64,000 nt of DNA from contig JANJGN010000041.1 in NCBI GenBank assembly GCA_026770705.1, positions 5,766,001 through 5,830,000 on the forward strand, written 5' to 3'. The stretch's first letter is position 1. Each line of letters starts with the position of its first letter. The DNA is from Isurus oxyrinchus. Taxonomy: Eukaryota. A model generated the notes under the pieces. The model searched no databases, was not told the DNA's origin, and was given only the letters and a program-made list of their open reading frames with translations. A program made the translations under genes and the position numbers. Shown one piece after another: positions 2,490 through 58,084 of the stretch.

Positions 2490-2850
2490 GTCAGCTCACT
2501 CAACGGTGGTGCTAACAATCCTGTCTTCATGCTAGGCATTGACAGCATTGACCCAGATTGCTCTCAGTAATCCTGCTCCCCCGAGTGCTTCTTCCAGCTG
2601 TGCATTAGTGTGGTATATTCATTCATCAGCTGAGGTGGGACCAGGAGGCGTTAGCATGCTGGTGCCACCAATTGCCATATACGCCCTGTTGCTATGTGGT
2701 ATTGGGATCCAGGAGGACTGTTTAGGGTGTCCAGGACCACATACCTGCTGGATGTGGTGGATCTTTCGTGTGGATGGGGGACAAAGGCGGTGATGAATGA
2801 GCCTGGGATGTAGAGCGGAATTAAATCACAACATTGTTGAATCCACCAGT
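2490..2850 (-). mobile_element. Degenerate LINE (CR1 group) endonuclease-region fragment
   Basis: Minus strand reads like decayed APE sequence (WLG...TDRAG.../HVDLPPH). It lies just downstream of defensin-like copy 1, as similar fragments do for copies 2 and 3. Confidence 0.45.
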
Positions 2851-3062
2851 TGGAAAGCAGACTCCGTTGCTCCCTGTCCCCCAATCTCCCCACCACCCTC
2901 TCTGGCCTTGCCTATATGGCAGCACATGCCAGTTCACCCGAGAAATGAGACATGGACAGGAGGCGGTGAGCAATGCAATGAGACGTTATTCACATGGTTC
3001 AGTAAAGCGGTGGGATCGGGTTCAAGGGGATTCTCCACGTCTGAATGAAACAGCAATCAAGA

Positions 3063-3229
3063 TTAGCTTCTGTCGGAGCCTCGGACATAGGTGCATCCTC
3101 CATGGCCTTGGGCCTCATTTAGACATGCATCAGTGAAAGTCTCTGGCGCACTTGTTAGCAATCTCGTCTGATCGCTTTTGTAGGGGCTCGATTTCCAATA
3201 CCCAACATGTATGCATCCGAATGCGAGGG
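3063..3229 (-). pseudogene. Beta-defensin-like copy 1, exon 2 (disabled)
   Basis: Acceptor is ttttcctgcttttttccag|. It reads (A)LAFG C IHVGY W KSSP Y KSDQ, then a 1-nt frameshift, then EIANK C ARDFH * C MSK*. W (TGG), Y (TAC) and * (TGA) sit at Cys2, Cys3 and Cys5, each one base from TGC. The ancestral frame stops at 3115; the shifted frame stops at 3063. Confidence 0.75.
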
Positions 3230-3879
3230 CTGGAAAAAAGCAGGAAAAATCTCATAAGTCATTGTTTGTGGTTCAGGGGTGGTCGTGTTGTGGGGGGATG
3301 GGTAGTTCTGGGTTTGGTAGAGAGAGTGAGCATCGAGTCACCTCCATTAAAAAGTATGAGGATGAACAGTTGGCAGCTACATAACATTCAAGGTATGTGT
3401 GAAGTGTTAGTAAATGGAATTAGGTAGGTAAGGAAAGTTGTTTCTCAAGTGTCGATGCAGACTCGATGGGCTAAAAGATCTCTTCCACACCGTGTGATCA
3501 TATGATAAAGAAGGTAGTTCTGTCTGTCACTCACGGGAGGGTGGTGGACCACATGGTCTTACACGGAATCCCATGTCTCCCGCTTTTCTTTAGTCAATAG
3601 TTCCTTTCAACGTGTTGACACTATTCACCTCAACCCTTCCCCTCTTATAGAAATTCCCACGTCATCACCTCTCTTGTGTGCTGATGTTTATCCTGATTTA
3701 CCTATTCGATCGCCTTTTGCATCTCTTATCCTGTTGGACACCTAGATATGGGTCAGGCAACAGGTGGGAACATCTTCCTACATCTACCCTATCGAATTAT
3801 CCATGTGTCACACAACAAAAACACGAATTATTCATATCTCTGTGACCGAGCGTAGACCCCCAGCGAGCTTCAGAGGAGT

Positions 3880-4480
3880 GTTATCAAATTGCATCAATCA
3901 TCAACTCACAAGGGATACACTGGGGGAGTGACCAAATGCTAGGTCCATGGTAGGATTTTATTGAGTGACTGAAAGTTGGAGAGACGGCGGGGAACATGTG
4001 GAGAGGTTTTGTGAATGAATTTTGGGGTTCGATTCCCAGGCGGGTGGAGACAGGGCCACGAATGTAGCATAGAATGAAATGGGTGAATGTCCAGGGGCCG
4101 GAAATGTGGTAATGGAGAGATCTTGGAGGCTGGATGGTTGGAGGGAATTACAGGGATAGGGAGGGGGCAAGATACTGGAGGGATTTGAAAACCAGAAACT
4201 GACGTCAGAAATAGATAGACCGGTTGTTTAAAGGGGATCAGAAGTAAACCTCCGGGCACAAGGTGATCAGTGAGTGTTAGGACTTAGGCAGCAGAGTTTT
4301 GTGTGCCTTCACTTTATGTAAGGTGGAATGTGGGAGAAACAGCCAGAGTTATATTGGCATACGGAACTCAAGAATAACCAATGTTTGGATGAAAATTTCA
4401 CTGTCAGGTCCGATGAGACTAGGTCACTGTTGGGTGATGTTTCCGTAGTGGATATAGGTAGTCTTTGAGGTGGCAAGGAT
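3880..4480 (-). mobile_element. L2 LINE 3' fragment in the intron of defensin-like copy 1
   Basis: Reverse of the typical L2 end (ccctccctatccctgtaattccctcc; ttcaaatccctcca). Confidence 0.55.
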
Positions 4481-4644
4481 ATATGGCAGGTATCACATTT
4501 TGGGATCAAATCCACACAAGTCTCTGTCTCGGAGACTTCCCAGGAACAGGGATGAAGTAAGCAGCGAGGGAACATTTGTAAGTCCAGGGCTGAAAACAAT
4601 GGTGTGAATCAAAGAGTTCTCAGAGACACACTCAACTCCGCTAC

Positions 4645-4726
4645 CATCAGGCAGGGCTCTTGCTTGGGCAGTGGTGGTCTGCACCAGTAGCAGGCCAACA
4701 AGAGCCAATAGCAGTGCTTTCATCAT
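4645..4726 (-). pseudogene. Beta-defensin-like copy 1, exon 1 (signal peptide)
   Basis: MMKALLLALVGLLLVQTTTAQARALPD followed by G|GTAGCG, a phase-1 donor at 4644. The site matching the copy 3 donor (after codon 21) lacks GT. Paralogous to 12664 and 16210. Confidence 0.75.
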
Positions 4727-4778
4727 CGTCTGCCAATCTCCTCCCAGTCACAATGAGATGATCGGAGTAAGGGTGGTA

Positions 4779-4784
4779 TTTATA
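4779..4784 (-). promoter_or_regulatory. TATA box of defensin-like copy 1
   Basis: TATAAA on the minus strand about 53 nt upstream of the ATG, at the same spacing in all three copies. Confidence 0.7.
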
Positions 4785-5319
4785 CAAATTAAGAAAAAAA
4801 ATTGTAGTTAAAAATAACACACTTCTGGTGGAGATTGGCTAGCACCACGTCGTGTTAAATTCGTCATTCAGAAATTGGAAGCAACAATAAATTGAATCAC
4901 TGATTAAAGGGGTCTCCAAGGCAAGTTTTCATTAATCAGTAGCAGTAAAACCTCAGCAATGATTAAAATGGGGTTAGTTTATAGAATCACTGTGCGGTGA
5001 TTAAACTGAAGACACACAGTAAAGGAAGAGCCCATTGACCAATCACGCCAGTCCTGCCTCTTTAAATGTACCATCCTATTCTAGCCCCTTCCTCCCCGAA
5101 CTTTCCCCAGTTTTGTATCTCCTGATCCACTTCCCCTTGTGAATGATAACATTGAACCTGCTTCAACTGTCGTTTCTGTCAGCGGGGTACAGGGCAAAAT
5201 AACTCGCTGCTGCCAAAGAAATTTCCACATCTACTCACGAGCCCTTGTAAATTCCCTTAAATCTGTTTTCTCTGGATCCATATCCTCCAAACTTCTAAAA
5301 TATCACACACAGAAAGTTG

Positions 5320-5545
5320 GAAGAGGAGTTGAAGTGTTCGCCCCTCGTGCCATTTTTTACCCCTCAAGCAACACAGCTAAAGCTGGTCATCAAAAATTGC
5401 TGTTTGTTGGATCTTTCTGTGCCCTACTTTCAGTGGCAGTCCCCTACATTATGCTTGTAGCTACAACTCAGCACCGTACCACAGGCAGTGGGGCGTGCGT
5501 TCATCTGTCCTTTACTGGTGAACGGTGCTATATAAATGAGTCTTC
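5320..5545 (+). mobile_element. Deu-domain SINE (SacSINE1/AmnSINE-like) fragment
   Basis: ctggtcat...ttgctgtttgttggatct...cctacatt...ggtgctatataaatg resembles the DeuSINE core and tail. Confidence 0.6.
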
Positions 5546-5689
5546 GCCCTTGCTACATTGAATCCACAGCCCATTGGATCTTGTGGAATCAGACGCAATA
5601 GGGCACCGGAAAAAAAAATCCTGCACAATTCCTGCTAACACCATTCCTCGCTCGATGAATCCAAGTTGAACAACATCTGGTGGAGACAC

Positions 5690-6957
5690 TGTTATTCGCA
5701 AAGGCTGTAATCTAATTGAGATAGTCTAAATGAGTTATTTTGTTGAATGTAGGTGTTACAATTGCATATTAGCTTTAAGGTTTAAGTTTGATTTGTATTC
5801 TTGTACCTGTGTGTTAGGAAAATGTCAAACTGAGATTCAGTTTCACTTTAAAATAGTACCAACATTTCTAATGAGGCATTGTCCGACCGTTGCAGCTAAG
5901 GTAATCAAACATGAGTGGAAGATTTGGGCCTCATTGCATTAGAAAGTTAGGCCCGCTCACAGGCACACACACAACAAACCTTGACACAGCAGTTTTAATT
6001 TGGAAGCAGTTGGATTTTAGCAGGTTTTTAAGGTAGCTGCCATGCAGGAACAGCCTAGAGGAGGTCGGATAGCCCAGCCCAAACAGAAAGAACCCTTAAG
6101 AATCCAAGGAAGCGGAACATGAGAAAGCCCCAAACAGAACTTCGTGTTAAAGGGAGGACAGAATCCTGGAAAAGCTCCTGTTAGGTGGCGCTAAGAGTGA
6201 GGGTTTGAGAAGGACTCCATGCTTCAAGTTTAAAGTGTGAAGACACAGAATGCAGATGTAAAGTGAGAACAGCTAGCAAGAGCCAAGAAGGTCAAAAGAG
6301 GCAACTGAGGTTCTGTAAAACTTTGCTCTCGGCAATTGAAGGAGTAGTTCTTTTTTTGGCGGAGTATTTGTGAGACAATTCATTACAACAGTTTGGATGC
6401 ATCTTGTGGCCCAGAGGAGAGGAAGATCAGAAGGAGAGTCACTGAAACGAACATTTGTGGAAGGCTTCTGGTTTAGCAGATGATTCCAAGCAGAGAGAAA
6501 GAGTTTGGAAGCCCTCGTGTGAAAGATGGGGCTCACTGAGACCAGCTTTCTGACTTTGTGACAAGCGTCGGTCCGATTTGAGGAAAGATTCATTGCATCT
6601 GGTTGTGTGGCAACTGCCACATGATTTCAGAGTGTTGTGTACATGACTGCATTTTGCCTACTGGACATTCTACTTACTGTGAAAATTGGAGTGTAAGATA
6701 GCTTTTGTATCTTGTGTTATCTTTACAAACCTTTACATAACTGTAGTTGTGGGTGAAGAAATATTGTAATATATTTGACATTTTATTCTTTAATAAATGT
6801 TGTGCTCTTTTGCTAAACGTTCCTCAGCTGACTCCAGTGACTCTTCAGTAGCCCCATCCACTTATCTTAAGAAACAAATAAAAGTGAGGGTCTATAAAGT
6901 TGGGTTTCAACTTGGTATCACTTTTGTACAGGGGTAAACTCAGCTGGGTTGGCAACA
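5690..6957 (+). mobile_element. Solo LTR-like element
   Basis: About 1.27 kb bounded by TGTT...AACA, non-coding, with AATAAA near 6792 and 6877. No clear target-site duplication. Confidence 0.45.
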
Positions 6958-7259
6958 TAGCACATGATGTAAACTGGGTGTAAAGGGTCTCCAATGCCGA
7001 GGAGTAACAGTGACTGAGCAGCAACATTGTTGAACGAATTTGCTGAGTCTTGATGGATATATCAAACGGGCTGGAAGGGAAGGAAGGTTCCTGTCCTTCC
7101 ATTAACTCGAAAGCATGATTGAGACTTCCTAAATTTCCATTCCCTTCGACTCTTGGAGGCCTTCTTTAGCTTGGAACTGACTATCTGCCCCCTTTTAGGC
7201 TTTTCACACTGGCAAGTATCTTGAAAACTTGCTGAACTCCAACAGCCTCCAAAACTAAC

Positions 7260-7517
7260 TAGTTTTTTTGTTTTTATCTCTGTGTTTAATTGACTGCCAC
7301 TGCTCTTCAAGAAATGCCGACCTCCTTGAAGAAGTTCTGTTCCTCTCTGCGACAAGATTTCCATATCTCTAGTCGAAATCAAGTTCTGTCGAAGGGTCAT
7401 GAGGACTCGAAACGTCAACTCTTTTCTTCTCCGCCGATGCTGCCAGACCTGCTGAGTTTTTCCAGGTAATTCTGTTTTTGTTTTGGATTTCCAGCATCCG
7501 CAGTTTTTTGTTTTTAT
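7260..7517 (+). mobile_element. Young Penelope-type 3' terminal insertion with TSD
   Basis: Contains gaagggtcatgaggactcgaaacgtcaactc...gatgctgccagacctgctgag, the same end type as the GIY-YIG element at 51.4 kb. Flanked by an exact 11-bp repeat ccaaaactaac (7249-7259 and 7518-7528). Confidence 0.75.
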
Positions 7518-9919
7518 CCAAAACTAACCTGCTGTTCCTAGCTTTTGCGTGCGTTTCTGAGAGAGGACCTGCCTTTCTAAGCCCCCATGAGCAGGCAATA
7601 GATAAAAACCTCCATTTTATACCACTTCCATCTCTCAGTGGCAGGCGGTGAGAGAAGCAACAGCAGGGGTTAACTTGCTTGCCCCTGTCCTCACTGATCT
7701 ACCCTGGAGCAGATGAATTTGTCTATGGCAGATATCAGCAGGAGTAACTGGCACAAACTCTTTGTAGAGGCACAGTGCAGTCTTCACTATGATGACACCT
7801 TCCATCGTGATGTCTGTCACTCTCAACTGTGTCCGGCAGCGCAAATGCAGGCATCCTTGGGGCACTGTGGGGCATCTGCTGCAGAGGCAGGATTGAGCAC
7901 AAAGGTAATCTGTAATCTGATGTCCTGGCACAAACTTCACTCTCCCACTGAGCTGTGTGTTTACAGACAAATCATGCAAGGTAGCGGTACAGGGAAATAG
8001 AACGCAAGCAATTTCTCATGGGCAGTTCGGAGTAGTCATGAAATGTTCACATCGCAGGTGGGGCACATTTTCGAAGAATGGAGAGGTGAAGGATATGGAA
8101 GAGGGTGGAATGCCTGTTGGGGTTCACCGTGCACCAATTTTGGATACCATTTTGCCAACCTTCCAAAGTGTAGTGCTGGTGTCGGGCTGCTTATCAGCCT
8201 GTTAAGCATTTGCCTTGATCACAGAACTGACTGGTCATCAGTAGCTGTACCGTATGACAGCCTTGGACATGGGCACCAGGATCTCGAAAACGATTCGCCC
8301 CGGCACAAGGCCCCAGCTGCTTCCCTGCCGTCTGTGTGCAAAATGCACAGGCTGGAATTCCACAAGGTTGTGAAAAATGTGTGATCTGAATCCAGGGGCG
8401 CACCATTGCCCGGGGACCTTAATACCTTTGGGCCACAGAAACCTATCAATTCTACAGTTAAATATTAGAAATAGATCTCGCACCTGTTGCTTTTTAAAGA
8501 AAGGAGTTACCAATGTGTATCACCCCTTGTGTATGGCAGTGTTGTACAGAGCAGCCTGACTAGGCCCTTTGGACTCTGTCACATAGCCTGAGTGTCGTCA
8601 ACCAGTGAATATAATTTTTCTTTATCAGCCTTATATGTTCCACTTAACACCTTAAATACTTCAACTCAACCACTCTGGAACGTTCCAAATTCCAGGGAGT
8701 ACATGGATTATTTTTGTAATCTCTGCCAGCCTATTTTCCCTTGCCGCCCAGGTATCATTTCTGGTAAACGTGTCCTGCATTCCCTTCACGCCTGACAACT
8801 CACATTAGGGAAAATTGTCAATAGTTGATTCGTCTCCATCTCCCTATTTCTCTCTCTCCCTCTCTCTATCTCATTCCATTCTTAAGCAAGAGAGTGGCTT
8901 TCAGAATTACGCAGCCTCAACAAATAATTCTAGTATGGATGGAAATCCGGGGAATTATAGACTGGACATCCGCAATTTATCAGCTGTTTCCTTCAATCGC
9001 TGGCATGAAAACTATCTGACCCTGTGTTTTCGGCATCCAAATGTCCCATTATTTTCTCCACGTCCATTATGTTGCTAATTCTAGGTCTTTATGAGCATTA
9101 TCTTTCAAAAAAAATCAGGCTATATGTTATCTTCACTGGAAGGGCCAGAACATCTCTGCAAACCTTCGTGATTCTCAACCAATTGTAAGAATGCTTCCCT
9201 ACAACATAGCGATCTTAGCTAGTGCCCTAGTCTGACCATTCTCGACCAATAGAGAGAGAGAGTTTGACTTTCCTACAACAATATAGCCTTAACTTGTGCC
9301 AGTTCCTCACAATTCTAGCTCTCAGTCCACAATTCTCGCCATCGGCATCCAGTTTTGGCTTGTGGTGAATGAGAACTCTGGACCCTCTGGAGCCAAAGGT
9401 CAAAATGCTTCCCAGCTCTAACTCAGTTCCATTCTGTGCTGCCTTTTCTCCTTAAAGCTAATTTACAACACTTTGTCATTTATAGAGCTGCCAACTATAG
9501 GTCAACTTAACAACATTCCAAAAGTGAATAGGAATTGCGATCTTACATTCCTCAGCTGATATGAAGCACCGTTCGTAACCTGAGCCTGGACAAATAGAGC
9601 AATACATCAATGCATTGACGGACCAGAAGGTTGGAAACTCAGGTATGCCTGTTGCTGGTCTTGAAATCGTCTTCTGCAGTCTGGAACTGAGTTTGTAATT
9701 GGGAAACATTTTGCTTTTGATCTTTGGAGATTCTAGATTATCATTCAACAGATGCCAAAACTGAATGCCAATTGGCTAAAAGTGTAGACTGAGGTCTAGA
9801 ATTGTAAGGAACGTGCAGAATTTAAGGCTAGATTGTTGCAGAAAAAAACAGATGTTCTCATTCCATTGGCCAAGAACCATGCTTGATTCCTTGTTTTAAA
9901 GGTCATGGTAGGATGAAGA

Positions 9920-10625
9920 GTATGCCGGGCCATGATCTTGCAGATTATGTCTGAATTTAATTTTGCTGCTGCTGATGTCCCAAAGGGCCTCATGGATATT
10001 GAGATTTGAGCTGCGTGAAATGTTTTGAATCTATCCCATTGACAGTAATGCACGTAGCACAACACACTGAAGTGTCTCCCCAGTTTGAAGACAGAGGTCT
10101 ATTGTCACAAGGAGTGTGCGGTGGCCATGCCTACCAGCATCTTCAGAGACAGATGCATCTGCAGCAAGTACATTGGTGATGATGAGATCAAGTACAATAT
10201 TCCCTCTGGTTGGTTCACCTGTCTCAGGTCTATTTTGCCTATCGCAGCTCATCCACCTGGGTCTGTTGTGGTGACCAAGAGCCACTCTTGGTGATGGACA
10301 TGCAGGTCCCACAGTAGAGAACATTCTGTGCCCATGATACGCTCAGTGCTTCTTCCATAAGGTGTTTCGAATTGATCAGATTCTGCAGAGTGATAAGTGG
10401 GTATCAGCAGGAGGTTCTCATTCCCGTGTTAGCCCTCATGCTTTGTCACATAATAGAGACTGTATTTAATGCTGAGCCCTCCCAGTGGGAACCCATACCT
10501 ATTGTATTTCCCTCTGCCGCCATCCTGGTACCTTCCTCCTGTCAGCGGGGCATCATAAACACAAGAATATGGGTGGCAAACCTTTGCCATTGGCTGTGAA
10601 GTTCTGATTCTGATAGCATGACAAT
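9920..10625 (-). mobile_element. LINE (CR1 group) AP-endonuclease fragment
   Basis: ORF 10031-10324 reads EPTRGNIVLDLIITNVLAADASVSEDAGRHGHRT, the PTRG..LDL...SDH motif of LINE APE. Confidence 0.7.
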
Positions 10626-10939
10626 TCAGGAGCTACAAGATCCCAATGAGAAAATGCCGTGTTCTACACGTATGCCTAAATTGGAGCTGAAAGATGACAA
10701 CATGACTCTTGCATTTTCTAACCTCTCCTCCCTGCCTGCTGGTCGATATGGTGACACAGCGATCCGAGTGAGAAATTACACATGGAGAAGAGGCGGTAAA
10801 CAATGCAGCCATTTTTATGCAAATGATTCAAAAAGCAGCGTGGAAGGGGTCATTGGATCCATGCAATGAATGAAAGAAATTAAAGTCAATCTCAGCCAAA
10901 CCCACAGGTTGACCTGGCAGTACGATATATTCACTTTTG

Positions 10940-11047
10940 TCAACCCCATTCAGCCTCACAACACTTAAAAATGAATCAGCACTTCCAGCGCATTAAGGCC
11001 TCTTCATCATTGCATCCTCTCATTCTACTTGCCACTGCTTCATCGCG
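10940..11047 (-). pseudogene. Beta-defensin-like copy 2, exon 2 (disabled)
   Basis: Reads R DEAVA S RMRG C NDEEALMRWK C *FIFK CC EAEWG*. Cys1 is CGC, Cys2 is AGT, and there is a premature TGA at 10976-10978. The acceptor AG and first codons appear deleted relative to copy 3. X4, X10 and X5 spacings are kept. Confidence 0.75.
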
Positions 11048-11169
11048 AAATCCGAAGGTCATAACAGCCAAGCAATTTATTGAACAATCGATTTGAGTGT
11101 CAAGCTTTTGTTTCCTGATGCAGACTGAGAGCTCAACTATGGGCGGTGATGATAGCATGGCGGAACATG

Positions 11170-11720
11170 GGGGCAAGAGCTGTGCACAGTGCATGTACTG
11201 TGGTCTAACCCATCGATAGGAAGGCCACGGCTGCACACAGTGCTCCGGGTGTGGTCTAAACAAGGCATATGGAGAGCAGAGCTGTGCACAGTGCTCCAAG
11301 TGTGATCTAACCAAAGGATATGGAGACCGGAACTGTGCACAGTGCTCCAAGTCTGTTCCAACCAATGGATATTGAGACCAGAATTGTGTGCGTACTCCAG
11401 CCTTCGTCTAAGCAAGGAATATGGAGACCAGAAATGTGCACAGTGCTCTGAGTGCTGTGTAACCGAGTGATATGGAGACCAGGACTGTGCATAGTGCTCC
11501 ACGTGCGGTCCAACGGAGGGATATGGAAACCAAAATACTGCACAGAGCTCCGAGTGTGGTTGAACTGAGGGAAACAGACAACAGAACTGTGCATAGTGCT
11601 CCAAATGTGGTTTAACCGAAGAATACAGACACCGGCACTGCGCACGTTGCTGTGACTGTACTAGAAGTGAGGTTTATGGGTCCAGCCATATTCAGAGTGC
11701 TCCAATTTTGTCAAACCGAG
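11170..11720 (-). repeat. ~48-bp minisatellite derived from a CR1 ORF2 motif
   Basis: About 11 units of gatatggagaccagaactgtgcacagtgctccaagtgtggtctaaccaag. The minus strand translates to repeats of LVRPHLEHCAQFWSPY. Confidence 0.85.
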
Positions 11721-11732
11721 ATGAACAGAAGT

Positions 11733-11859
11733 GAAAAAATAAAAACAAAAAAGCTGCGGAAGCTGGAAATCCAAAACAAAAACAGAACTGCTGAAGGGTC
11801 ATGAGGACCCGAAACGTCAACTCTTTTCTTCTCCGCCGATGCTGCCAGACCTGCTGAGT
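11733..11859. mobile_element. Short Penelope-type terminal insertion with internal inversion
   Basis: 11736-11785 is the reverse complement of the tail at about 7470-7517, and about 11790-11859 is nearly identical to 7390-7458. Flanked by atgaacagaagt and atgaacagaggt. Confidence 0.7.
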
Positions 11860-11959
11860 ATGAACAGAGGTAGCCGTTCTGCCCAACTAGCAGGGTGCAT
11901 CCTTTGTCGCACTTGGAGAGAGAAGAAATGTCCCATCGCACCACACGGGAACCTGATGG

Positions 11960-12340
11960 GGGGAAAATGACAGAAAACCATAGCAAAACATACTAAAGAG
12001 AGAGAACATAAAGTTCACTCAAGAAATGTTGATTCTAGGGATTATCCCAAAGTGGGAGAAAGAGGTGGAGAGGATTATAGATGGAATAACAGATTCGAGG
12101 CTCCAGCAACCAAATGCTGTGCCCCTAATGGCAGATCCTTCAGTCAATGACTGGAAACACAGAGGATGCCAGAATTCAAGAGTTACCAATACCTGGATTA
12201 GTTTTTTGGCTGTGGCTGATTACAGACGTAAGGAGGTGGTGGGCTGGTTCAGGGATTTGGAAACATGGTATATGCATGATGCACGATATCACCGTGTGAC
12301 AACAGATAGATTGGCAGTACAAGGAGACCGGGAATAAATA
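11960..12340 (-). mobile_element. L2 LINE 3' fragment in the intron of defensin-like copy 2
   Basis: ggagaaagaggtggagagg...gattacagacgtaaggagg...agggatttggaaac. Same type and orientation as the fragment at 3880-4480. Confidence 0.5.
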
Positions 12341-12573
12341 CTTGGTGGAATGAGCTTAATTTAGAAAACTAATGCAACATCTTAAAAACTGATTTTGATA
12401 GCTTTCCCTTTGGAAATCCTTTAATGTCACAGCACCAACGTACATTGATGGAGTTCCGACACATATTAGCTACAATCCACTTGAAATGAAGCACAGCATC
12501 GATGGTTTTAATGGCCTCCTTCTATCTCTCTTAATGCTTCTTTGGCTTGTGTACTGAGAGATGAACTATCCAC

Positions 12574-12664
12574 CTAATAAACATCTTGTAATCGCTGCTC
12601 CATCAGCAGTAATGGGGTGTACCAGCACCAGGAACACAAGCAGCAAAAGCGGTGCTTTCCTCAT
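12574..12664 (-). pseudogene. Beta-defensin-like copy 2, exon 1 (signal peptide; not in the ORF track)
   Basis: MRKAPLLLLVFLVLVHPITAD followed by G|GAGCAG, where the expected GT is absent at 12600. An alternative phase-1 G|GTGGAT lies at 12573. Confidence 0.7.
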
Positions 12665-12717
12665 TCTCCACTCATATCATCCCAGGTCACAATGAGATAG
12701 CTGGAGCACAGACAATC

Positions 12718-12723
12718 TTTATA
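12718..12723 (-). promoter_or_regulatory. TATA box of defensin-like copy 2
   Basis: TATAAA about 54 nt upstream of the ATG at 12664, within a conserved block (plus strand gtcacaatgagat). Confidence 0.7.
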
Positions 12724-12959
12724 TGAAGACATTGCATACTGTAGCTAAAACTGTCACACGCACTCCTTCGGAAGACCCCACCTTCGGAAATTTGAAGGGA
12801 CAGTTAACCGAGTCCAATATTAACTGGAAGCAACTAGTTTTTCATTCATCAGCGATGAGACAGATCGGAATAATAATTGAGCTCACAAAGGTTTATAGGA
12901 ATCTTAAAATCAGCCTCGGCCTCTACGGGGAGAAGAGTTGGGAGCTCTCTACCTTGTTA

Positions 12960-13130
12960 CCAGAGGTGAATGTTCATCCATCTATCAACAAAGCGAACAC
13001 ACGTTATCTGGTCAGTATTGCCTTGCTGGTGGTAGCTTGCTGTACACAAATTGGCAGCCACAATTTGTAGATGCTAGCAATGACTGCCGTCAACAATGTC
13101 CTGGTGAAAGGTGACAGAAAAGCTTAATCT
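12960..13130 (+). mobile_element. Deu-domain SINE fragment
   Basis: gttatctggtcagtattgccttgctggtggtagcttgctgtacacaaattggcagcc...gtgaaagg. Confidence 0.6.
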
Positions 13131-13544
13131 CTTTATCAACATTGCTTTCTCTCTCTCACTTTCCTTACTTTGTCCTCTTGTCTGACTGTTCCCCCTCTCT
13201 ATTTCTCAGCCCACTGTTCTAATAGTGGGGCTTACTTAGTCATTATGTTTTGGGTCTATTTATTTTGTTTTATAAGACTGTTAGTGTTTGGGCCAGCCTC
13301 TCTGATTTAAGTGCATGAAGGGAGGTCATGTAATTCATCCTGCCTGACAGTAAATGTGGGTGTGTAATTCTTAGTAAAAGAAAATCTTCCGTTGTTAAGT
13401 GAGAAGGAGGTGCCAGATATTTATAATTGGAGAGAACGACGTCTCTTTTTAATTCTCACGTGAACAGACACTTAGTCTGCAAAGGCCTGGATAGGCTTTT
13501 ATCAATACAAAATGCAACCATTTGTTGGAACTTAGGGACAAAGG

Positions 13545-14530
13545 ACTTTATAGCAGTAGACGTCCATTTAGGCCCTTGAGACTGCTCCACCAATCAATAA
13601 GATCACGGCTCATCTGGTTGTCTCTCAAAGACACTGTGTCACTGGTCCCACCAACATGCTTGAGTCACTTGTCTATCAAAATCCAATCAAGTTCTACCTC
13701 GAATAAATGCAATCACCCAGCCTACACTGTTTTCTTAAGGAGAACATTCCACACATTAATAAGCCTTTGACAGATATGGACAATCTCCTCATCTCTGTCA
13801 TAAACAAAGACCTCTTATTATTCATCTGTCCCTATTGGTTCTAGTCTCCCTCATAAGTGGAAAATCCCTCCCGGTATCTCCCTTATAAAATACACTCCGC
13901 ATACGAAATGCTTTAGTTTAACGTTGTGCTATTCGAAATTCCAATGTTTGTGGGCATACACTGTCCAGACTTACCTCATTAGACAACTTCCTCATCATCA
14001 TGATGTATCCTGTCTCTTCGTTACTAAGATGTAAGGTCATTGTGATCATGGGTCGCTGTTCAACATTTCTACGTTCATACAAAAGTAACGTGCCTTCTGG
14101 AAGAGGGTTAGAGGAAGCCATTTTGTGATCAGGTTACAGGCTTCCCTATGAACCCATTCAAATCAGAGGCAGGCTGTGATTCTTTTTGTTTATTGGCAGA
14201 GTTTGCAGTTTTGGTCTGGTGTGGTCAGTGGACATATGCGAGATACATGGGCAACAAAATAGAGTGAGATAGTGTCTGCCTGGGATGGTCCACGTACATC
14301 TTTAGTATTGTTGTAAACTGTGTTTTCCCTGATGCCATTAGAAATCAACGAATTTGGGGTCATTACAGAACTTCCCCCTCCTGGATGCATGCCACTGTGC
14401 CCTCTCCTCCGCTGGTTCTGTCCTGCCAGCAGTACCAGCTATTCCCAGGGATGGCCATGGGTGAGCGGGGGACATTGGCTCTAAGGTACGATTTTGTGAG
14501 CCGGACTATATTGTAGTTACAATATACCAA
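13545..14530 (-). mobile_element. Mixed decayed CR1 fragments (3' end and endonuclease pieces)
   Basis: CR1 3' tail at about 13550-13990. An APE-like piece at 14330-14530 reads AIPGNSWYCWQDRTSGGEGTVACIQEG. Confidence 0.5.
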
Positions 14531-14630
14531 TATGGTCCTGCCATTCCCCTTCCTCTCTGTCAACGTGGAGATACACATATATGAGTGAGCAATGAGACAT
14601 GGACAAGAGGCGGTGATCAATGCAACCCGT

Positions 14631-14636
14631 TTTATT
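14631..14636 (-). terminator. Polyadenylation signal of defensin-like copy 3
   Basis: AATAAA about 127 nt after the stop, inside a block conserved in all three copies. The matching sites are CATAAA (10814-10819) and AATAAC (2985-2990). Confidence 0.65.
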
Positions 14637-14762
14637 CACAAGATTCAGAAAGGAAATGTTCAGAGGTCATTGGATCCACCAATGTTTCTGAGCCTGAATG
14701 GCAGACATTACAGTAAGAGTCAGTATGAGACTCAGACAGGTGTCACACTGGTAGAGATTCCT

Positions 14763-14890
14763 TCATTGTAGCTCAGGGAGCCAGCAGCACGTGTAAGGCC
14801 AGACACGCTGCCAGGTGACCAGTGTTTCAAGATGGTGACGCTGGTCATTTCTACAGTCTCCTCCTTTTCTGACACATTCGAGGCTCCAAG
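14763..14890 (-). CDS. Beta-defensin-like copy 3, exon 2 (mature peptide, 4-Cys variant)
   Basis: Acceptor is tcttccattctgatttccag|. It reads (A)WSLE C VRKGGD C RNDQ R HHLETLVTWQ R VWPYT CC WLPELQ*. The frame is open, spacing is C-X6-C-X4-[C]-X10-[C]-X5-CC, and both substituted sites are CGT. Confidence 0.7.
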
Positions 14891-14939
14891 CTGGAAATCA
14901 GAATGGAAGAGACAACAGGCAAGGTTTTTGAGCGTTCAG

Positions 14940-15450
14940 CACTGCTCGAACCCACATATAATTAGACATGTAACGCACACAGCTCTGCAATTGTGGACTA
15001 ACAAGGGAATATGAGGGCAAGAACAGCACAATACTCCAACCAGGTCCTAACTGAGGGATATTGAGACCAAAACTGTGGCAATGCCCCAGCTGTGGTCTAA
15101 CCAAGGGATATGATGACCAGAACTGTGCACAGTGCTCCAGCCGTGGTTTAACCAAGGGATATGGAGACCAGAACAGTGCACGATTCTGCAGATGTAACCG
15201 AGGGATATGGAGACCTGAAATGTGCACAGTGCTCCAGAACGTACCAATATATATATTAAACCAGAAATGTGCACAGTGCTCCACGTCTAACAGACGGGTA
15301 TGGAGGCCAGAACTGTGCACAGAGCTCCAGATCTATCCGATGGATATGGAAACCAAAACTGTGCACTGTGCTCCAGATCTATCCGACGATAACGAGAACA
15401 GAGCCGAGCTCAGAGCTCCTATTGTGGATAAACCACGGGATACAAGGAAC
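14940..15450 (-). repeat. ~48-bp CR1-derived minisatellite (second array)
   Basis: Same unit as 11170-11720 (LVKPRLEHCAQFWSSY). It lies just inside the intron of copy 3. Confidence 0.85.
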
Positions 15451-15579
15451 AGAAACTTACGGATTGAGAATTATGCAATTTATAAAAAACATCAAGAAAA
15501 TAAAATCACTCAATTGCCTTTTGGGAGCATCTTACAATATCATTCCACACAGAGTCAAAATAGCAGTTATTTTTGACAG

Positions 15580-15995
15580 GTGACTCAACATGCACCAAAA
15601 GAGGTTGGATTGAATGACCATCTCCAGGCAGCAGAGAAAGGTGTGTATAAGGTTATACTGGAGAATCTCCAGCCTCGGCTCCAGACAACTGATGGCACGG
15701 TCGCTTACAGCAAGTAACTTATAATCTTGGAACGGGTAGAGTGAGAAATTGGTGGAACGCAGGTATCTGGAAGATTTTTTGGGCTCGAGGAGATTGCAGA
15801 GTGTCGGAGGATCGTGATAATGTTGGGATTTAGAAATGATTAATACAAAATATCACCAAGGGACAGCATGTGGATGGGAAATTCGAGGAGAATGAGGATA
15901 GATCTTCGGCGGATAATAGGTGAGGTTGGATTACAAAAAAAACACCCAATTTTTGAAGAAGGCTAAAATAGAGACCGACATCTTGGTCTTTGGAA
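15580..15995 (-). mobile_element. L2 LINE 3' fragment in the intron of defensin-like copy 3
   Basis: Same decayed L2 end as in the introns of copies 1 and 2 (gagattgcagag...gggatttagaaatg). Confidence 0.45.
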
Positions 15996-16149
15996 AAGTT
16001 TATAATGATAATGGAACCAAAATTGTCCAATGGGCTTAAGACATATATCAGCAAAGAGCAAATTGAAATATAAAACTGGCTTGAGGGGCTGAATGGCCTC
16101 CTCCTATGGTAATGACTGCTTCTGAGAGATAACCTCCGTGGATAACAAC

Positions 16150-16210
16150 CGATAAGCATGGACTCCACCACCATCACCAATCCAAATACCAAGAGCAGTG
16201 CTTTCCACAT
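16150..16210 (-). CDS. Beta-defensin-like copy 3, exon 1 (signal peptide)
   Basis: MWKALLLVFGLVMVVESMLI followed by G|GTTGTT, a canonical but weak phase-1 donor. Splicing to 14890 gives an open 62-aa precursor. Confidence 0.7.
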
Positions 16211-16262
16211 CTTCCCCTTAGCTCCCCAGAGTCACAGTTGGATGACTGGTGTACACATGATC

Positions 16263-16268
16263 TTTATA
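16263..16268 (-). promoter_or_regulatory. TATA box of defensin-like copy 3
   Basis: TATAAA about 53 nt upstream of the ATG at 16210. Confidence 0.7.
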
Positions 16269-16819
16269 TGAACTGAGAGAGAATTATGTCGCTAATAATC
16301 GTTGGCACCGTGAGGGCTGGATGTACGTTGGGCAGGTTAAAGGAACATTTCACTAAATGAGGCCGGCTGTAACTGTAATCCCCGGCTAAATGTCTCTCCC
16401 AGGCCGGATTTTATTAATCAACAGATAGACGGATCTGTGTAAAGATTGAGCATGTGAAGGGTTAAAGGAATTGTTCTCTGTGTTTAAAATAAGGAACAAT
16501 CTTCAGATTAAGGGCGCCATTTGGCCCACGGTGTCTCTGTTGGCTCTGTGAAAGGGCTGCTGAATTATGCCCCTTCAATCTCTTCTCTTTCCCGATTGCC
16601 ACGCTATTATTTTTACAGTGCCCCATTTGAAAGTTACCATTGAATATGCTCCAATATCTTTTTGGCAAGCGCATTCCAGATCACAAAAGCTTTCTGTCAA
16701 GAAGACATTCTCTTCACCTTCTCTCCACTTCCTTTGTGAATTATTTTCAAACTATTTGTACTGATTTCCAGATCTGTGCACTGTCTGAAATATCCCAGCA
16801 CATCTATTGGAAGTAGAAT

Positions 16820-18689: not shown

Positions 18690-19250
18690 CAAGATTAATT
18701 GCCCATCCCTAATTGCCCCATGAGAACGTGGTGTGTGAGCTGTCTCCTTGAGCCGCTGTCTTCCCGTGTGCTTTAGGTACTCCCAAAGAGCTGATAGGGA
18801 GCGAGTTCCAGGATTTGAGACAGAAGATGTGCAGTAATTGTGGTATAGTTCCAATCAGAATGGTTTGGTGCTTGGAGAGGTACCTTAAATGATTATAATC
18901 CCCTGTGCCCACAACCCTTGTCCTAACAAGCAGTGGGGATCAAGGGTTTGGAAAGCTGTGCTGAAGGATCCTCGGTGTTTTATTGCAGCGCACCTTGGTG
19001 ATGATATACACTGAAGCCATTGAGAGCCATGTGGAGACATCCTCCTCATTTTTGATCAGATGCCACGAGGCTTCACGGGATGTGGAGTGAACGTCGAGTG
19101 CTCCCGGAAACATACCTTCGTGACTCAGGTGAGACTGCCCTGCCGCTGTGGATGATAATTCCCAGGGACAGTGAATTAGAAATCTGGGCTTGTGGCTTCA
19201 AGCTATGATTGGATACGGGATGCTAAGTCAGCCAGTTGATCGATTAGTCT
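18690..19250 (-). mobile_element. CR1-group LINE fragments (3' tail and endonuclease piece)
   Basis: Reverse of the ggcaattagggatgggcaat tail at about 18700. An APE-like piece at 19020-19250 resembles 14330-14530. Confidence 0.55.
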
Positions 19251-19259
19251 GTGGGACAG

Positions 19260-20836
19260 CTCTTTCAATTCAGAGTGGGCTCTGTGTTCAGCGAGGTCTC
19301 TGTGTTCAGCGTGGATCCTGTTTTGAATGTGGGCTCTGTGTTCAGCGTGGTCTCTGTGTTCAGTGTCTGCTCTGTGTTCAAAGTGGGCTTTGTGTTCAGT
19401 GTGGGCTCTGTGTTAAGTGTGTGTTCTGTGTTCTGACTGTGCCCACTTTCAGTGTAGGCTCTATGTGCAGAGTGGGCTTTGTGTTCAGTGGGTGCTCTGT
19501 GTTCAGAGTGTGTCCTGTGTTCATGTGGGCTCTGTGTTCTGTGTGGGTACTTTGTTCAGTGTGAGCTCTTTGTTCATTTTTGGGTTTTCTGTTCACTGTG
19601 GGCTCCGTATTCAGTGTGGTCTCTGCGTTCAGAATGGTCTCTGTGTTCATTGCGATCTCTGTAAGCAGTTAGGGCTCTGTGTTCAGTTTTGGCCCTGTGC
19701 TCAGTTTGGTCTCTTCATTACAATATTTAAACCTGATGGATGTTGATAAACGTAACCACACAGCAGCTGTGGTCAGTGTTTTTGTCAGTATTCAGTGTGG
19801 GCTCTGGATTCAATGTGGGCCTTCTGCTCAGAGTGGGCCCAGTGTTCGAGTTGGCCCTGTGATCAGATTAGCACTTTGTTCAGAGAAGGCCTTGTGTTCA
19901 GAGTGGGCCCTGTGTTCAGCGTGTGCCCTGTGCTCAGATTCAGCCCTTTGTTTAACGTGGACCTGACTTCAGTGTGGGCCCTGTGTTCAGTGTGAGCTCT
20001 GTGTTCAGTGTGGTATGCCTTCAATGTGGGCCCTGTGTTCTGTATTGACTCTGTGTTCGGTGTGGGTATTGTGTTCAGTACAAGGTCTGTGTTCATTGTG
20101 GTCTCTGTGTGCAGAGTGAGGTCTGTTTTCAGTTTTGGGCTCAGTATTCAGTGTGGGCTATGAGTTCATTCTGGAGCTTGTGTTCAGTTTTGGTTCTGTG
20201 TTCAGAGTGGGCCCTGTGTTCAAAGCGGGCCCTTTGTACAATGCGGGCCCATGTTCAGAGTGGACACACTGTTCTGTGTGATCTCTGTGTGCATTTAGGG
20301 CTCTGTGTTCATTGTGGGCTCTGTATTCATCATGGGCTTTGTGTTCTGTGTGGGCCTCGGAATCAGTGTGGGCTCTGTGTTCAGAGTGGGCTCCGTGTTC
20401 AGAATGGCCCCTGAGTCCCGAATGGGCCCTGAGTTCAGAGTGTGCTCCGTGTTCAGTGTGGGCTGCTTCATCAGTGTGGCCTCCATGTTCAGAGAGGACA
20501 GGTGTTCATCGTGGGCTCGGTGCTCAGAGAGGGGTCTGTGTTCTGAGTGGGCTCTGTGTTCAGTGTCTGCTCTCTGTTCATAGTGGGCCCTGTGTTCAGC
20601 GTGATCTCTGTGTCCAGGGTGTGCTCTATGCTCACAGCGGCCCCGTGTTCAATGTGGTCTCTTTGTTCAGAGTAGGCTCTGGCTTCAATGTGGATTCTGT
20701 GTTCATCATGGGCCCTGTGTTCAGAGTGGACCCTGTGTTCAGTGTGGCCCTTGTGTTCAAATTTCATCCTTGTTCAGTGTGGCCTCTGTGTTCTGAATGT
20801 GCTCTGTGTTCAGCGTGGGCTCTGTGTTCAGTGTTC
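19260..20836. repeat. 18-bp minisatellite (tgtgttcagtgtgggctc)n
   Basis: Directly visible tandem array of about 1.6 kb. It generates the spurious Cys-rich ORFs in this interval. Confidence 0.95.
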
Positions 20837-21119
20837 TAAACACGTCTCCCCTGCTTTCCCCACATTGCCCAGATGTTTAATCCTTTCAATTATTTATGCA
20901 CCTGATATTCTGGAACTTCCTACTGAATCGGCTTCCAGGCAGAGCGTTCCAGATCACAACATCTCACGGTGTAAAATTAAATTCACCTCAGCTTCGATAT
21001 ACTTCAGTTTCCACTAACCTAAAATTATCTTCAATGTTCTCCTGTTGATCACCAGATCTCGCAGCCTTGAAAGTTCTCTTTGGATAACGAAAAGCCCTGG
21101 GAAAGATGTACCCCACGTC

Positions 21120-22156: not shown

Positions 22157-22199
22157 CAGAGGAGAAACAGGGAAGCTCATGATTCTCAAGGTGTTGCAC

Positions 22200-23008
22200 T
22201 GACAGACATAAGCACAAACACACACGCGCACAAACACAAACACAGATAAACAGAAACATGCACACACCCACATACACAAACAGAAAGCCTGACACACAGT
22301 GACACCATTAGACATAAACACACACACACACACTGTAGCAAACACAGGAAAACAATCTGAAACGCAGACACATAGACGTTTGCATAGACACATGCAGAGA
22401 CAGACAGGCACATGAAAACATACAGACACGCATACACAGACACACGCAATCACACACAAACACTGGCACACATTCACTTTGATAAACACACACACACAAT
22501 AACACAAACAGGCACACGGATTTAAACACAGGCACACAATTGCATGCAGACACACAGAGAGAGAAACAGACTTGCACACTCACACACGACACACATGCTC
22601 AGGCTCGCATTTACTCGTCCACATACACAGAGACTAAAAGCACAGACACATTCACACAAAGAAACACGCACAGACATGCCAAAAGGGTCTCACACTTTCA
22701 CACTGACACCCAAACAGGGCATGCACAGGCATGTGCACCTAAACACAGATGCAAACACACGCATACACATTAGCACATATTATCACTCTCCGACAATCTG
22801 TCCCTCTCTCTCTCACACACACACCCACTCACAAACACAGAGACACATACACACTAACAAAATCATGCACAGACTGAAACACACATGTGTGCACACAACA
22901 CACATGTCACTCACATGCTGACTTACATATTCACTCATTCACAACTGCTCACAAATTCACACAGACACATCCAGACACCCTCTCTTCTCCACTCTCTCTC
23001 CTCCAATC

Positions 23009-23044
<36 letters not shown>

Positions 23045-58060: not shown

Positions 58061-58084
58061 CTCAGCTTTCATCATGTGTCATGA

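What the first reader, a model, noticed from the sequence alone, without database searches (positions are those of the whole stretch)
2900..16420. Hidden tandem cluster of two-exon beta-defensin-like genes in a probable shark genome
Seen in sequence: three minus-strand units share TATAAA about 53 nt before a signal-peptide exon (MMKALLL..., MRKAPLL..., MWKALLL...). Each has a 1.3-1.6 kb phase-1 intron, a short second exon and a conserved poly(A) block. No copy has six intact Cys, yet all keep C-X5/6-C-X4-C-X10-C-X5-CC spacing, and every missing Cys codon is one substitution from TGY. The copies lose mostly different cysteines, so together they reconstruct the motif. Established knowledge: this spacing and a signal exon plus phase-1 intron are typical of mammalian beta-defensins, whereas teleost beta-defensins usually have three exons. 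Inference: this is a cartilaginous-fish beta-defensin family under birth-and-death evolution, easily missed by annotation. I cannot verify whether it is already described.
Basis: partly seen in the sequence, partly recalled or inferred. Interest (0 to 1): 0.88.

Follow-up and report, generated by a model that had tools for sequence, protein, structure and literature searches.

The report
Decayed beta-defensin-like gene trio
Three neighbouring, broken copies of a small secreted-peptide gene together show the cysteine pattern of beta-defensins, so they look like relics of an immune-peptide family rather than working genes.

Summary
The three minus-strand units are real paralogues. Promoter plus signal exon and a 3' block match between units at E 1e-8 to 1e-18, and there are no other copies in the window.

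Exon 2 of units B and C aligns without gaps: 51 of 126 nt are identical, a value reached by 1 of 10,000 shuffles. In that register the Cys codons fill exactly six columns, spaced C-X6-C-X4-C-X10-C-X5-CC. Across the three units, 11 of 18 motif codons are Cys and the other 7 are all one step from TGY. None of 102 other codons is Cys.

All three copies are damaged:
- **A** has a 1-nt frameshift and TGA at the fifth Cys.
- **B** has lost its acceptor AG and has an in-frame TGA.
- **C** has Arg at the third and fourth Cys and only a weak in-frame donor.

The beta-defensin label rests on the motif and gene structure alone. Pfam, PDB sequence search, ESM Atlas, AlphaFold plus Foldseek/VIA and three protein-database searches gave nothing. 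No RNA evidence was found.

First-reader notes of this scan, all unchecked, report similar clusters elsewhere in the same genome. Verdict: a pseudogene trio of a beta-defensin-type family, of moderate interest.

The parts
4779..4784 (-). Unit A TATAAA box
   Evidence: Sequence read, coordinates. It is part of the promoter block shared by the three units (family D11).
4645..4726 (-). Unit A exon 1 coding part (82 nt, phase 1): signal-like peptide, donor ATG|gtagcg
   Evidence: A 4822-4668 matches B at 66% over 156 nt, E 3.5e-14 (1.5e-14). A 4815-4675 matches C at 66% over 143 nt, E 6e-13 to 7e-13. extends this match into a longer 59% alignment, A 5012-4675, E 6.9e-16.
3230..4644 (-). Unit A intron (1415 nt), with a good acceptor (pyrimidine tract then cag)
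3115..3229 (-). Unit A exon-2 coding remnant. First Cys TGC, then TGG, TAC, a 1-nt frameshift, fourth Cys TGC, TGA at the fifth, sixth Cys TGC. In the spliced frame it is instead a 54-codon ORF with 3 Cys (3227-3066).
   Evidence: The 3' segment matches B at 23 of 48 nt without gaps.
2940..3005 (-). Unit A 3' block, including the hexamer AATAAC at 2990-2985
   Evidence: (82% to C over 66 nt, E 2.5e-11)
12718..12723 (-). Unit B TATAAA box
   Evidence: family D11
12574..12664 (-). Unit B exon 1 coding part (91 nt, phase 1), donor TAG|gtggat
   Evidence: WGS reads of another sample that carry 10 consistent differences (9 substitutions and one 1-nt deletion) pile up here, which suggests further B-like copies in the genome (tables 3 and 4, places 12605-12715).
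11065..12573 (-). Unit B intron equivalent (1509 nt). It ends in GCTG where A and C have CCAG. An upstream AG at 11138-11137 would give 1437 nt in the same frame. It holds a 51-nt minisatellite (11138-11689) and a very high-copy SINE-like element (11655-12036).
   Evidence: families D6, D7, D10; table 2 (depth about 12,000 per orientation, against mostly about 0-4 on unique parts)
10940..11064 (-). Unit B exon-2 remnant. The motif columns read TTT, AGT, TGC, TGC, TGT, TGT. There is an in-frame TGA at 10978-10976, just after the fourth Cys. The final TGA is at 10942-10940.
10749..10868 (-). Unit B 3' block, including the hexamer CATAAA at 10819-10814
   Evidence: 74% to C over 120 nt, E 3e-18
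16263..16268 (-). Unit C TATAAA box
   Evidence: family D11
16134..16210 (-). Unit C exon 1 coding part. The in-frame (phase 1) model ends at 16150, donor TCG|gttgtt. The alternative ends at 16134, donor GAG|gttatc, phase 2, with a stop 12 codons into exon 2.
   Evidence: That there is no GT at the place that aligns with the donors of A and B is my reading of the alignment.
14891..16149 (-). Unit C intron (1259 nt, or 1243 nt from the other donor), with a 46-51-nt minisatellite at 15030-15380 and a dispersed repeat near 16074-16105
   Evidence: families D6, D7; tables 2, 3, 5
14763..14890 (-). Unit C exon-2 coding part: a 41-codon ORF plus TGA. The motif columns read TGT, TGT, CGT, CGT, TGC, TGC, that is C-X6-C-X4-R-X10-R-X5-CC.
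   Evidence: It is the only C-X6-C-X21-CC in the six-frame translation of the window.
14587..14651 (-). Unit C 3' block, including the canonical AATAAA at 14636-14631

Best explanation
The region holds three tandem, same-strand paralogues of a small two-exon gene. The gene's layout is a TATA box, a short 5' UTR, exon 1 for a signal peptide, an intron of about 1.2-1.5 kb, exon 2 for a peptide of about 40 residues, and a short 3' UTR.

The last common ancestor of units B and C encoded six cysteines spaced C-X6-C-X4-C-X10-C-X5-CC, the beta-defensin type of framework. By analogy, that ancestor made a secreted host-defence peptide held together by three disulfides. This function is inferred, not shown.

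The copies arose by tandem duplication; B and C are sisters 3.5 kb apart. All three have since decayed:
- A is dead: a frameshift, a stop at the fifth Cys, and three Cys lost.
- B is dead: its acceptor AG is gone, it has an in-frame stop, and two Cys are lost.
- C keeps TATA, ATG, acceptor, an open exon 2 and AATAAA. But it has Arg at the third and fourth Cys and lacks a good in-frame donor, so it is most likely a recent pseudogene too.

Shown here: the paralogy, the in-register motif and the lesions. Inferred: beta-defensin ancestry, secretion, antimicrobial role, and that the units are not expressed.
For: - **Paralogy.** Promoter plus exon 1 pairs are 66-69% identical at E 1e-13 to 1e-14, and 3' blocks match at E 1e-8 to 1e-18. 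No further copy is in the window. B and C align over their whole units; A aligns only at its two ends.
- **Exon 2 of B against C, ungapped.** 51 of 126 nt are identical. The best of 120 offset controls gave 40, and 1 of 10,000 shuffles reached 51.
- **Motif table.** 11 of 18 motif cells are Cys and 7 of 7 others are one step from TGY. Among 102 non-motif codons, 0 are Cys and 23 are one step away.
- **Ancestral state.** With A as outgroup, site-by-site parsimony on the codons gives Cys at all six columns in the B/C ancestor (my inference).
- **Chance.** 71 of 1,000,000 random codon-window pairs gave exactly six fitting Cys columns.
- **Published motif.** The spacing lies within the ranges given in PMC12278569 (passages read).
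- **Signal peptides.** All three have n-, h- and c-regions.
- **Structure model.** The AlphaFold model of C exon 2 has three strands, with the CC doublet in the last one. This is weak support.
- **Other copies.** Reads of another individual carry 10 consistent differences (9 substitutions and one 1-nt deletion) over B's exon 1 and promoter. This points to further copies elsewhere.
Against: - No present copy has the six-Cys motif.
- Pfam gave 0 families for 4 of 4 peptides at E <= 10.
- The PDB sequence search gave only two chance-level hits, E 1.1 and 1.7, to potassium-channel subunits.
- The ESM Atlas best score was 0.83, to chromo-domain clusters, which is below the useful range.
- The AlphaFold model has mean pLDDT of only 65.8. 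Foldseek gave 0 matches at E <= 0.001, and the best VIA-align Z was 3.0 with no defensin listed.
- No relative was found in two searches of the 5.8-billion-sequence protein collection or one of the 1.84-billion-representative library.
- Net charge of each exon-2 ORF is 0, not cationic.
- All four candidate donors match the MAG|GTRAGT consensus poorly. The consensus is recalled, not taken from a call.
- A's motif model was fitted after the fact.
- The amount of Cys loss is compatible with neutral decay since duplication, so nothing here shows past selection on the cysteines.
- No RNA data bear on splicing.
Confidence: 0.7

Rival explanations
1. Unit C is still a working gene. It would be transcribed from its TATA box and spliced through the weak phase-1 donor at 16150|16149. 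The product would be a secreted, uncharged, four-cysteine (two-disulfide) derivative of the family. A and B are dead.
For: C alone keeps TATAAA, ATG, a pyrimidine-rich acceptor, an open 41-codon exon 2 and a canonical AATAAA. It lost two cysteines, so the number left is even. In the beta-defensin pairing (C1-C5, C2-C4, C3-C6; PMC8231796, passage) the second and sixth Cys would be left free to pair with each other. The AlphaFold model gives a three-stranded sheet.
Against: The only in-frame donor is TCG|gttgtt. The neighbouring GT gives phase 2 and a stop after 12 codons. No GT stands where the donors of A and B align (my reading). No run on record as RNA holds the stretch, and no exon1-exon2 joint was seen. 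But those RNA runs are small and their kind is only a guess. A 41-codon open frame is not rare by chance: about 0.14 from (61/64)^41, my own estimate.
Confidence: 0.2
2. The units belong to a different, lineage-specific family of small secreted cysteine-rich peptides. The match to the beta-defensin spacing would then be convergent or coincidental.
For: There is no HMM, sequence or fold link to any defensin. The peptides are not cationic. The conserved Gly before the fourth Cys, reported for lizard beta-defensins (PMC12278569, passage), is missing in B and C.
Against: The terminal CC doublet with 6/4/10/5 spacing falls inside published beta-defensin ranges. A signal-peptide exon followed by a single mature-peptide exon is the mammalian and proposed ancestral beta-defensin gene plan (PMC8231796, passages). 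Tandem clustering with differential decay is typical of the family. Decayed peptides that lack two cysteines are not expected to pass HMM or fold tests.
Confidence: 0.1

Closest known systems
Vertebrate beta-defensin genes
   Same: The inferred ancestral six-Cys spacing, C-X6-C-X4-C-X10-C-X5-CC, lies within the published range (PMC12278569). Other shared features are a signal peptide on exon 1 with the whole Cys domain on exon 2, tandem clusters, a mature peptide that evolves fast beside a better-kept signal exon, and frequent pseudogenes.
   Different: No present copy has six Cys. There is no HMM or fold match. Net charge is 0. The host lineage is probably cartilaginous fish (not verified), where I found no description in the open literature searched.
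Teleost beta-defensins
   Same: They belong to the same peptide class and are the nearest non-tetrapod group in which the class is described.
   Different: Teleost genes have three exons and two short introns of about 90-200 nt (PMC8231796, passages). These units have two exons and one intron of 1.2-1.5 kb, like the mammalian and proposed ancestral plan.
Big defensins of invertebrates (C-terminal domain)
   Same: The C-terminal domain has a beta-defensin-like six-Cys framework. A phase-1 intron is discussed as the link to beta-defensins (PMC7203481, one passage read).
   Different: Big defensins carry a hydrophobic N-terminal domain. No such domain is encoded between the signal peptide and the Cys domain here.
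Ovodefensins of birds and reptiles
   Same: They are two-exon genes with the signal peptide on exon 1, introns of 1.3-2.3 kb, and a terminal CC (PMC12278569, passage).
   Different: Ovodefensins have eight Cys with a different spacing. Here there are six Cys columns.

Membership tests
beta-defensin | Six cysteines in the encoded peptide, spaced about C-X(6-7)-C-X(3-7)-C-X(8-14)-C-X(4-7)-CC (PMC12278569) | tested here: not met
   0 of 3 present copies have six Cys: A has 3, B has 4 and C has 4. No intact motif occurs in the six-frame translation of the window.
beta-defensin | The same motif in the inferred ancestor of the copies (derivation from a six-Cys gene) | tested here: met
   B and C are in ungapped register (51 of 126 nt). 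The Cys codons fall in exactly six columns at 6/4/10/5/0 spacing. 7 of 7 non-Cys motif codons are one step from TGY, and 0 of 102 other codons are Cys. The chance control gave 71 of 1,000,000. Parsimony with A as outgroup is my inference.
beta-defensin | Match to the family's sequence profile (Pfam) | tested here: not met
   0 families for 4 of 4 exon-2 peptides at E <= 10. Little can be expected from peptides that lack two or three cysteines.
beta-defensin | Signal-peptide exon and mature-peptide exon separated by one intron (two-exon plan; that the intron is phase 1 is recalled, with one passage in PMC7203481) | tested here: inconclusive
   The sequence fits for A: GT..AG, phase 1. B lacks the acceptor AG at the homologous place. 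C is phase 1 only through a weak donor. No RNA evidence exists for any splice.
beta-defensin | Three-stranded antiparallel beta-sheet fold | tested here: inconclusive
   The AlphaFold model of C exon 2 has mean pLDDT 65.8 and strands at residues 2-6, 25-29 and 32-37. Foldseek against PDB gave 0 matches at E <= 0.001. The VIA-align wide search gave a best Z of 3.0 with no defensin listed.
beta-defensin | Cationic mature peptide | tested here: not met
   Net charge (K+R-D-E) is 0 for the exon-2 ORFs of A, B and C.
beta-defensin | Genes arranged in tandem clusters | tested here: met
   Three same-strand units lie within 13.4 kb. Unchecked first-reader notes report more clusters on the same sequence.
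beta-defensin | Disulfide pairing C1-C5, C2-C4, C3-C6, and antimicrobial activity | not testable with these tools
   This needs peptide chemistry and assays on an intact family member.
beta-defensin | Synteny with the conserved vertebrate defensin neighbourhood (for example MTMR9 and XKR6 in lizards, PMC12278569) | not tested
   Only 10 of the 26 ORFs of at least 110 aa in the window were scanned against Pfam, and none showed such a gene. The window is too small to judge.

The most novel reading that the evidence does not exclude
These units are relics of a large beta-defensin family of a cartilaginous fish that has not yet been described. The family would be spread in several clusters over megabases of one chromosome and would keep the two-exon, phase-1 gene plan. 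That would place this plan before the split of cartilaginous and bony vertebrates and make the teleost three-exon plan derived. Unit C might survive as a new uncharged, four-cysteine, two-disulfide offshoot.
Probability: 0.3. Interest if true: 0.6.

Novelty: new member of a known kind. Interest (0 to 1): 0.4.

Why it matters
Beta-defensins are the most widespread vertebrate host-defence peptides. A 2019 review of fish immunity (PMC6795676, passages read) lists no defensin among the antimicrobial peptides known from sharks and rays. The ancestral gene plan has been proposed to be two exons and one intron (PMC8231796, passage).

A two-exon, six-Cys family in a cartilaginous fish would support that proposal and fill a gap in the family's distribution. 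This window adds only three dead or dying copies. Its value is as a marker of the family and as a clear example of differential decay, not as a source of a working peptide.

Tried and rejected
- **Promoter motif.** A 14-nt promoter motif with up to 3 mismatches gave 9 matches against 4.9 expected, so it was not informative. blastn of whole segments replaced it.
- **Pfam.** The four natural exon-2 peptides gave nothing.
- **Protein-database searches.**
  - C exon 2 shared too few words with any candidate.
  - A's 77-aa read-through ORF, residues 1-40, was used so that candidate lengths would include 42-135 aa precursors. Two candidates shared words and none scored.
  - B's 32-aa exon-1 ORF by phmmer against 1.84 billion representatives gave 0 hits.
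  - These blanks have little power. The queries are very short, and small two-exon genes are often not annotated.
- **Other sequence and structure searches.** The PDB sequence search and ESM Atlas gave noise only. AlphaFold on C exon 2 without an alignment, followed by Foldseek and VIA-align, found no defensin.
- **Family profile.** I tried to build one from the five natural pieces of the three exon 2s. MAFFT misaligned them, so I dropped the profile search and the profile-based fold.
- **Reads.**
  - The two runs guessed to be RNA covered only repeats.
  - Depth of the two WGS runs over the exon 2s was about 1-2, too low to confirm or deny the lesions in a second individual.
- **Selection on the cysteines.** I considered arguing that the cysteines had long been under selection. 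I rejected this because 8 of 12 intact Cys codons in B and C is close to what neutral decay at the intron's divergence would leave (my estimate identities).
- **Left out on purpose.**
  - Any joined exon1+exon2 model.
  - Any comparison with defensin sequences from memory.
- **Literature.**
  - Searches found no paper describing beta-defensins of cartilaginous fishes.
  - In search 57, 22 papers hold both 'defensin' and 'chondrichthy'. I saw the listing of 21 and read passages from three of them (PMC6795676, PMC10707392, PMC9363672). Neither the listed titles nor those passages describe such genes.
  - Subscription journals are not covered.
  - Supplements are closed. The tables of intron positions in PMC12278569 could bear on the intron-phase claim.

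Full report
**What is there.**
Reading the minus strand of 2,800-16,800 shows three units with the same layout.
- TATAAA lies at 4784-4779 (A), 12723-12718 (B) and 16268-16263 (C).
- An ATG follows 53-54 nt after the end of each box, at 4726, 12664 and 16210.
- Each ATG opens a peptide with a basic start, a hydrophobic core and a polar end: MMKALLLALVGLLLVQTTTAQA.., MRKAPLLLLVFLVLVHPITADG.., MWKALLLVFGLVMVVESMLIG...
- About 1.2-1.5 kb downstream lies a short second coding stretch, then a poly(A)-type hexamer and a conserved block.

The window has no N and no intact six-Cys beta-defensin pattern in any frame.

**Are the units related beyond chance?**
Yes.
- blastn of the six segments against the whole window found only the three units.
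- Promoter plus exon 1 pairs are 66-69% identical over 140-156 nt, at E 3.5e-14 to 6.8e-13.
- The 3' blocks are 66-82% identical, at E 2.5e-8 to 1.4e-18.
- A 34-letter pattern from the 3' block hit A and C exactly, against 0 expected.
- B and C align over their whole length, intron included, at 56-63% identity in long gapped alignments. They share a 46-51-nt minisatellite in the intron.
- A aligns to B and C only at the promoter/exon 1 and at the 3' block.

So B and C are sister copies 3.5 kb apart, and A is the outgroup.

**The cysteine pattern.**
I started at the first full codon after the acceptor (14888 in C) and at the place that aligns with it in B (11062).
- The two exon 2s match without any gap at 51 of 126 nt.
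- 120 offset controls gave a mean of 31 and a best of 40. 1 of 10,000 shuffles reached 51.
- Only 6 of 42 residues are identical, and the three codon positions are about equally conserved (15, 16 and 20 of 42).

In this fixed register C reads C-X6-C-X4-R-X10-R-X5-CC. B reads F-X6-S-X4-C-X10-C-(TGA)-X4-CC.

The codons at the six motif columns are:

| Column | A | B | C |
|---|---|---|---|
| 1 | TGC | TTT | TGT |
| 2 | TGG | AGT | TGT |
| 3 | TAC | TGC | CGT |
| 4 | TGC | TGC | CGT |
| 5 | TGA | TGT | TGC |
| 6 | TGC | TGT | TGC |

- 11 of the 18 cells are Cys codons.
- All 7 others are one substitution from TGY.
- Among the 102 codons outside these columns, none is Cys and 23 (22.5%) are one step away.
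- As a chance control, 2,594 of 1,000,000 random ungapped pairs of 42-codon windows had a union of Cys columns that fits a broad defensin expression. Only 71 did so with exactly six Cys columns.
- C-X6-C-X21-CC occurs once in the six-frame translation of the window, in unit C itself.
- With A as outgroup, site-by-site parsimony on these codons gives Cys at all six columns in the B/C ancestor (my inference).

One caveat applies to A. Its entries need a first loop of five residues, a 1-nt frameshift between the third and fourth Cys, and TGA read as the fifth Cys. I fitted this model after seeing B and C. Its only independent support is 23 of 48 identical nt between the 3' segments of A and B.

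**State of each copy.**

| Feature | A | B | C |
|---|---|---|---|
| Donor | ATG\|gtagcg, phase 1 | TAG\|gtggat, phase 1 | TCG\|gttgtt (phase 1, weak) or GAG\|gttatc (phase 2) |
| Acceptor | good | GCTG in place of CCAG | good |
| Exon 2 | frameshifted, TGA at the fifth Cys | TGA right after the fourth Cys | open, 41 codons |
| Cys kept | 3 | 4 | 4 |
| Hexamer | AATAAC | CATAAA | AATAAA |

- **A.** In the frame set by splicing, exon 2 reads on for 54 codons with three unrelated Cys.
- **B.** An AG 72 nt upstream of the lost acceptor would keep the frame.
- **C.** Its third and fourth Cys are Arg (CGT twice).
  - The phase-1 donor is the only in-frame one. The phase-2 donor leads to a stop after 12 codons.
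  - No GT stands where the donors of A and B align (my reading).
- Introns are 1415 nt (A), 1509 or 1437 nt (B) and 1259 or 1243 nt (C).
- Net charge of each exon-2 ORF is 0.

**Independent tests of the beta-defensin label.**
All were blank or weak.
- Pfam gave 0 families for 4 of 4 peptides at E <= 10.
- The PDB sequence search gave two chance-level hits.
- The ESM Atlas best score was 0.83, to chromo-domain clusters.
- AlphaFold on C exon 2 gave mean pLDDT 65.8 and a three-strand sheet.
- Foldseek gave 0 matches at E <= 0.001.
- VIA-align against 48,161 chains gave a best Z of 3.0, with no defensin among the rows shown.
- Three protein-database searches found no relative.

Peptides that lack two or three of six cysteines, and queries of 32-41 residues, give these tests little power. 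So they do not refute the label, but they add nothing to it.

Three steps were left out.
- I did not search or fold any joined exon1+exon2 model.
- I could not search chondrichthyan genomes, because no such collection is on hand.

**Expression and reads.**
- Of 23 runs listed for unit C, 4 hold it. All four are DNA (a guess) from one study and one sample, and none is on record as RNA.
- I laid two WGS runs of another sample and two small runs guessed to be RNA on 10,700-16,400.
- The RNA-guess runs covered only repeats, and no exon1-exon2 joint appeared.
- WGS depth on unique parts was mostly about 0-4 per orientation (under 1 to about 2 over the exon 2s). So the locus exists in a second individual, but the lesions could not be checked.
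- Over B's exon 1 and promoter (12605-12715), 9 of 10 reads in X5 at 12605 carry the other letter. The same reads show 10 consistent differences in all: nine substitutions and one 1-nt deletion.
- The simplest reading is that further B-like copies, about 90-95% alike, lie elsewhere in the genome.

**Comparison with what is known.**
- Published spacing for lizard and other reptile beta-defensins is C-X(6-7)-C-X(3-7)-C-X(8-14)-C-X(4-7)-CC (PMC12278569, passages). B and C (6/4/10/5) fall inside it.
- Fish beta-defensin genes have three exons with introns of about 90-200 nt, and mammalian ones have two exons. A two-exon ancestor has been proposed (PMC8231796, passages). One passage in PMC7203481 deals with the phase-1 intron.
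- These units follow the two-exon plan.
- A 2019 review lists transferrin, squalamine and kenojeinin as antimicrobial agents of sharks and skates, and no defensin (PMC6795676, passages).
- My seven searches found no description of chondrichthyan beta-defensins. Subscription journals and closed supplements are not covered, so 'undescribed' is not established.
- That the genome is a shark's could not be checked. Organism names are coded, and Rfam found nothing in the window.

**Earlier notes of this scan.**
First-reader notes, all unchecked, report similar clusters on the same sequence.
- They lie from about 4.58 Mb before the window to about 0.91 Mb beyond it. Some are said to hold an intact gene.
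- One cluster abuts the window's start.
- One note suggests that unit C is a live four-Cys variant.

I used these notes as leads only. The paralogue-like reads are the one piece of my own evidence that more copies exist.

**Verdict.**
The best reading is a trio of decayed tandem paralogues of a two-exon gene whose ancestor had a beta-defensin-type six-Cys framework (confidence 0.7). Membership in the beta-defensin family rests on motif and gene plan only. The present copies fail the motif, profile and charge criteria, so I file them as relics of such a gene, not as beta-defensin genes. Interest is moderate (0.4). The family could matter for the origin of the vertebrate defensin gene plan, but this window holds only its wreckage.

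Noticed in passing
window 11655-12036 (intron of unit B) and 7386-7457: A SINE-like dispersed repeat. WGS depth is about 12,000 per orientation, against mostly about 0-4 on unique sequence (table 2). A 72-nt piece recurs at 96% identity between units A and B (family D10). Many reads show inverted joints at 11787/11859.
   Followed up: partly
window 11138-11689 and 15030-15380: A minisatellite with units of 46-51 nt lies in the introns of both B and C, so it predates their duplication (families D6, D7, D9). Read depth is about 30-100 per orientation, so related arrays exist elsewhere.
   Followed up: partly
window 2940-3005, 10749-10868, 14587-14651: The best-conserved piece of the units lies just downstream of the poly(A) hexamer: 82% between A and C over 66 nt, more than the signal exon. 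It is not a high-copy repeat by read depth. Why it is conserved is unexplained. It could be a downstream polyadenylation element, a regulatory element or gene conversion.
   Followed up: partly
window 12605-12715: Reads of another individual carry 10 consistent differences (nine substitutions and one 1-nt deletion) over B's exon 1 and promoter, and they outnumber reference-like reads (9 of 10 in X5 at 12605). This probably reflects further B-like copies elsewhere in the genome, or a divergent haplotype (tables 3 and 4).
   Followed up: partly
window 53450-54619, + strand: A decayed seven-transmembrane receptor-like frame. The ORF at 54248-54589 matches Pfam 7tm_1 positions 165-260 at E 8e-4, below the curated cut-off. 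The same frame upstream is broken by many stops. It is probably a GPCR pseudogene.
   Followed up: partly
window 19240-20850: A long array of diverged 18-nt tandem repeats (families D1-D3, D5).
   Followed up: no
window 22190-23083: A CA-rich, low-complexity stretch (families D4, D8).
   Followed up: no
window 56001-62000: A composition shift. GC reaches 0.56 at 56-58 kb, followed by strongly negative GC skew (-0.37) and AT skew (-0.25 to -0.31) at 58-62 kb.
   Followed up: no
window 16074-16105 (intron of unit C): A short dispersed repeat just downstream of C's exon 1. It has raised depth in the WGS runs and in both small RNA-guess runs, and a 'goes back 32' joint in the WGS reads. It explains the only signal of the RNA-guess runs near an exon.
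   Followed up: partly
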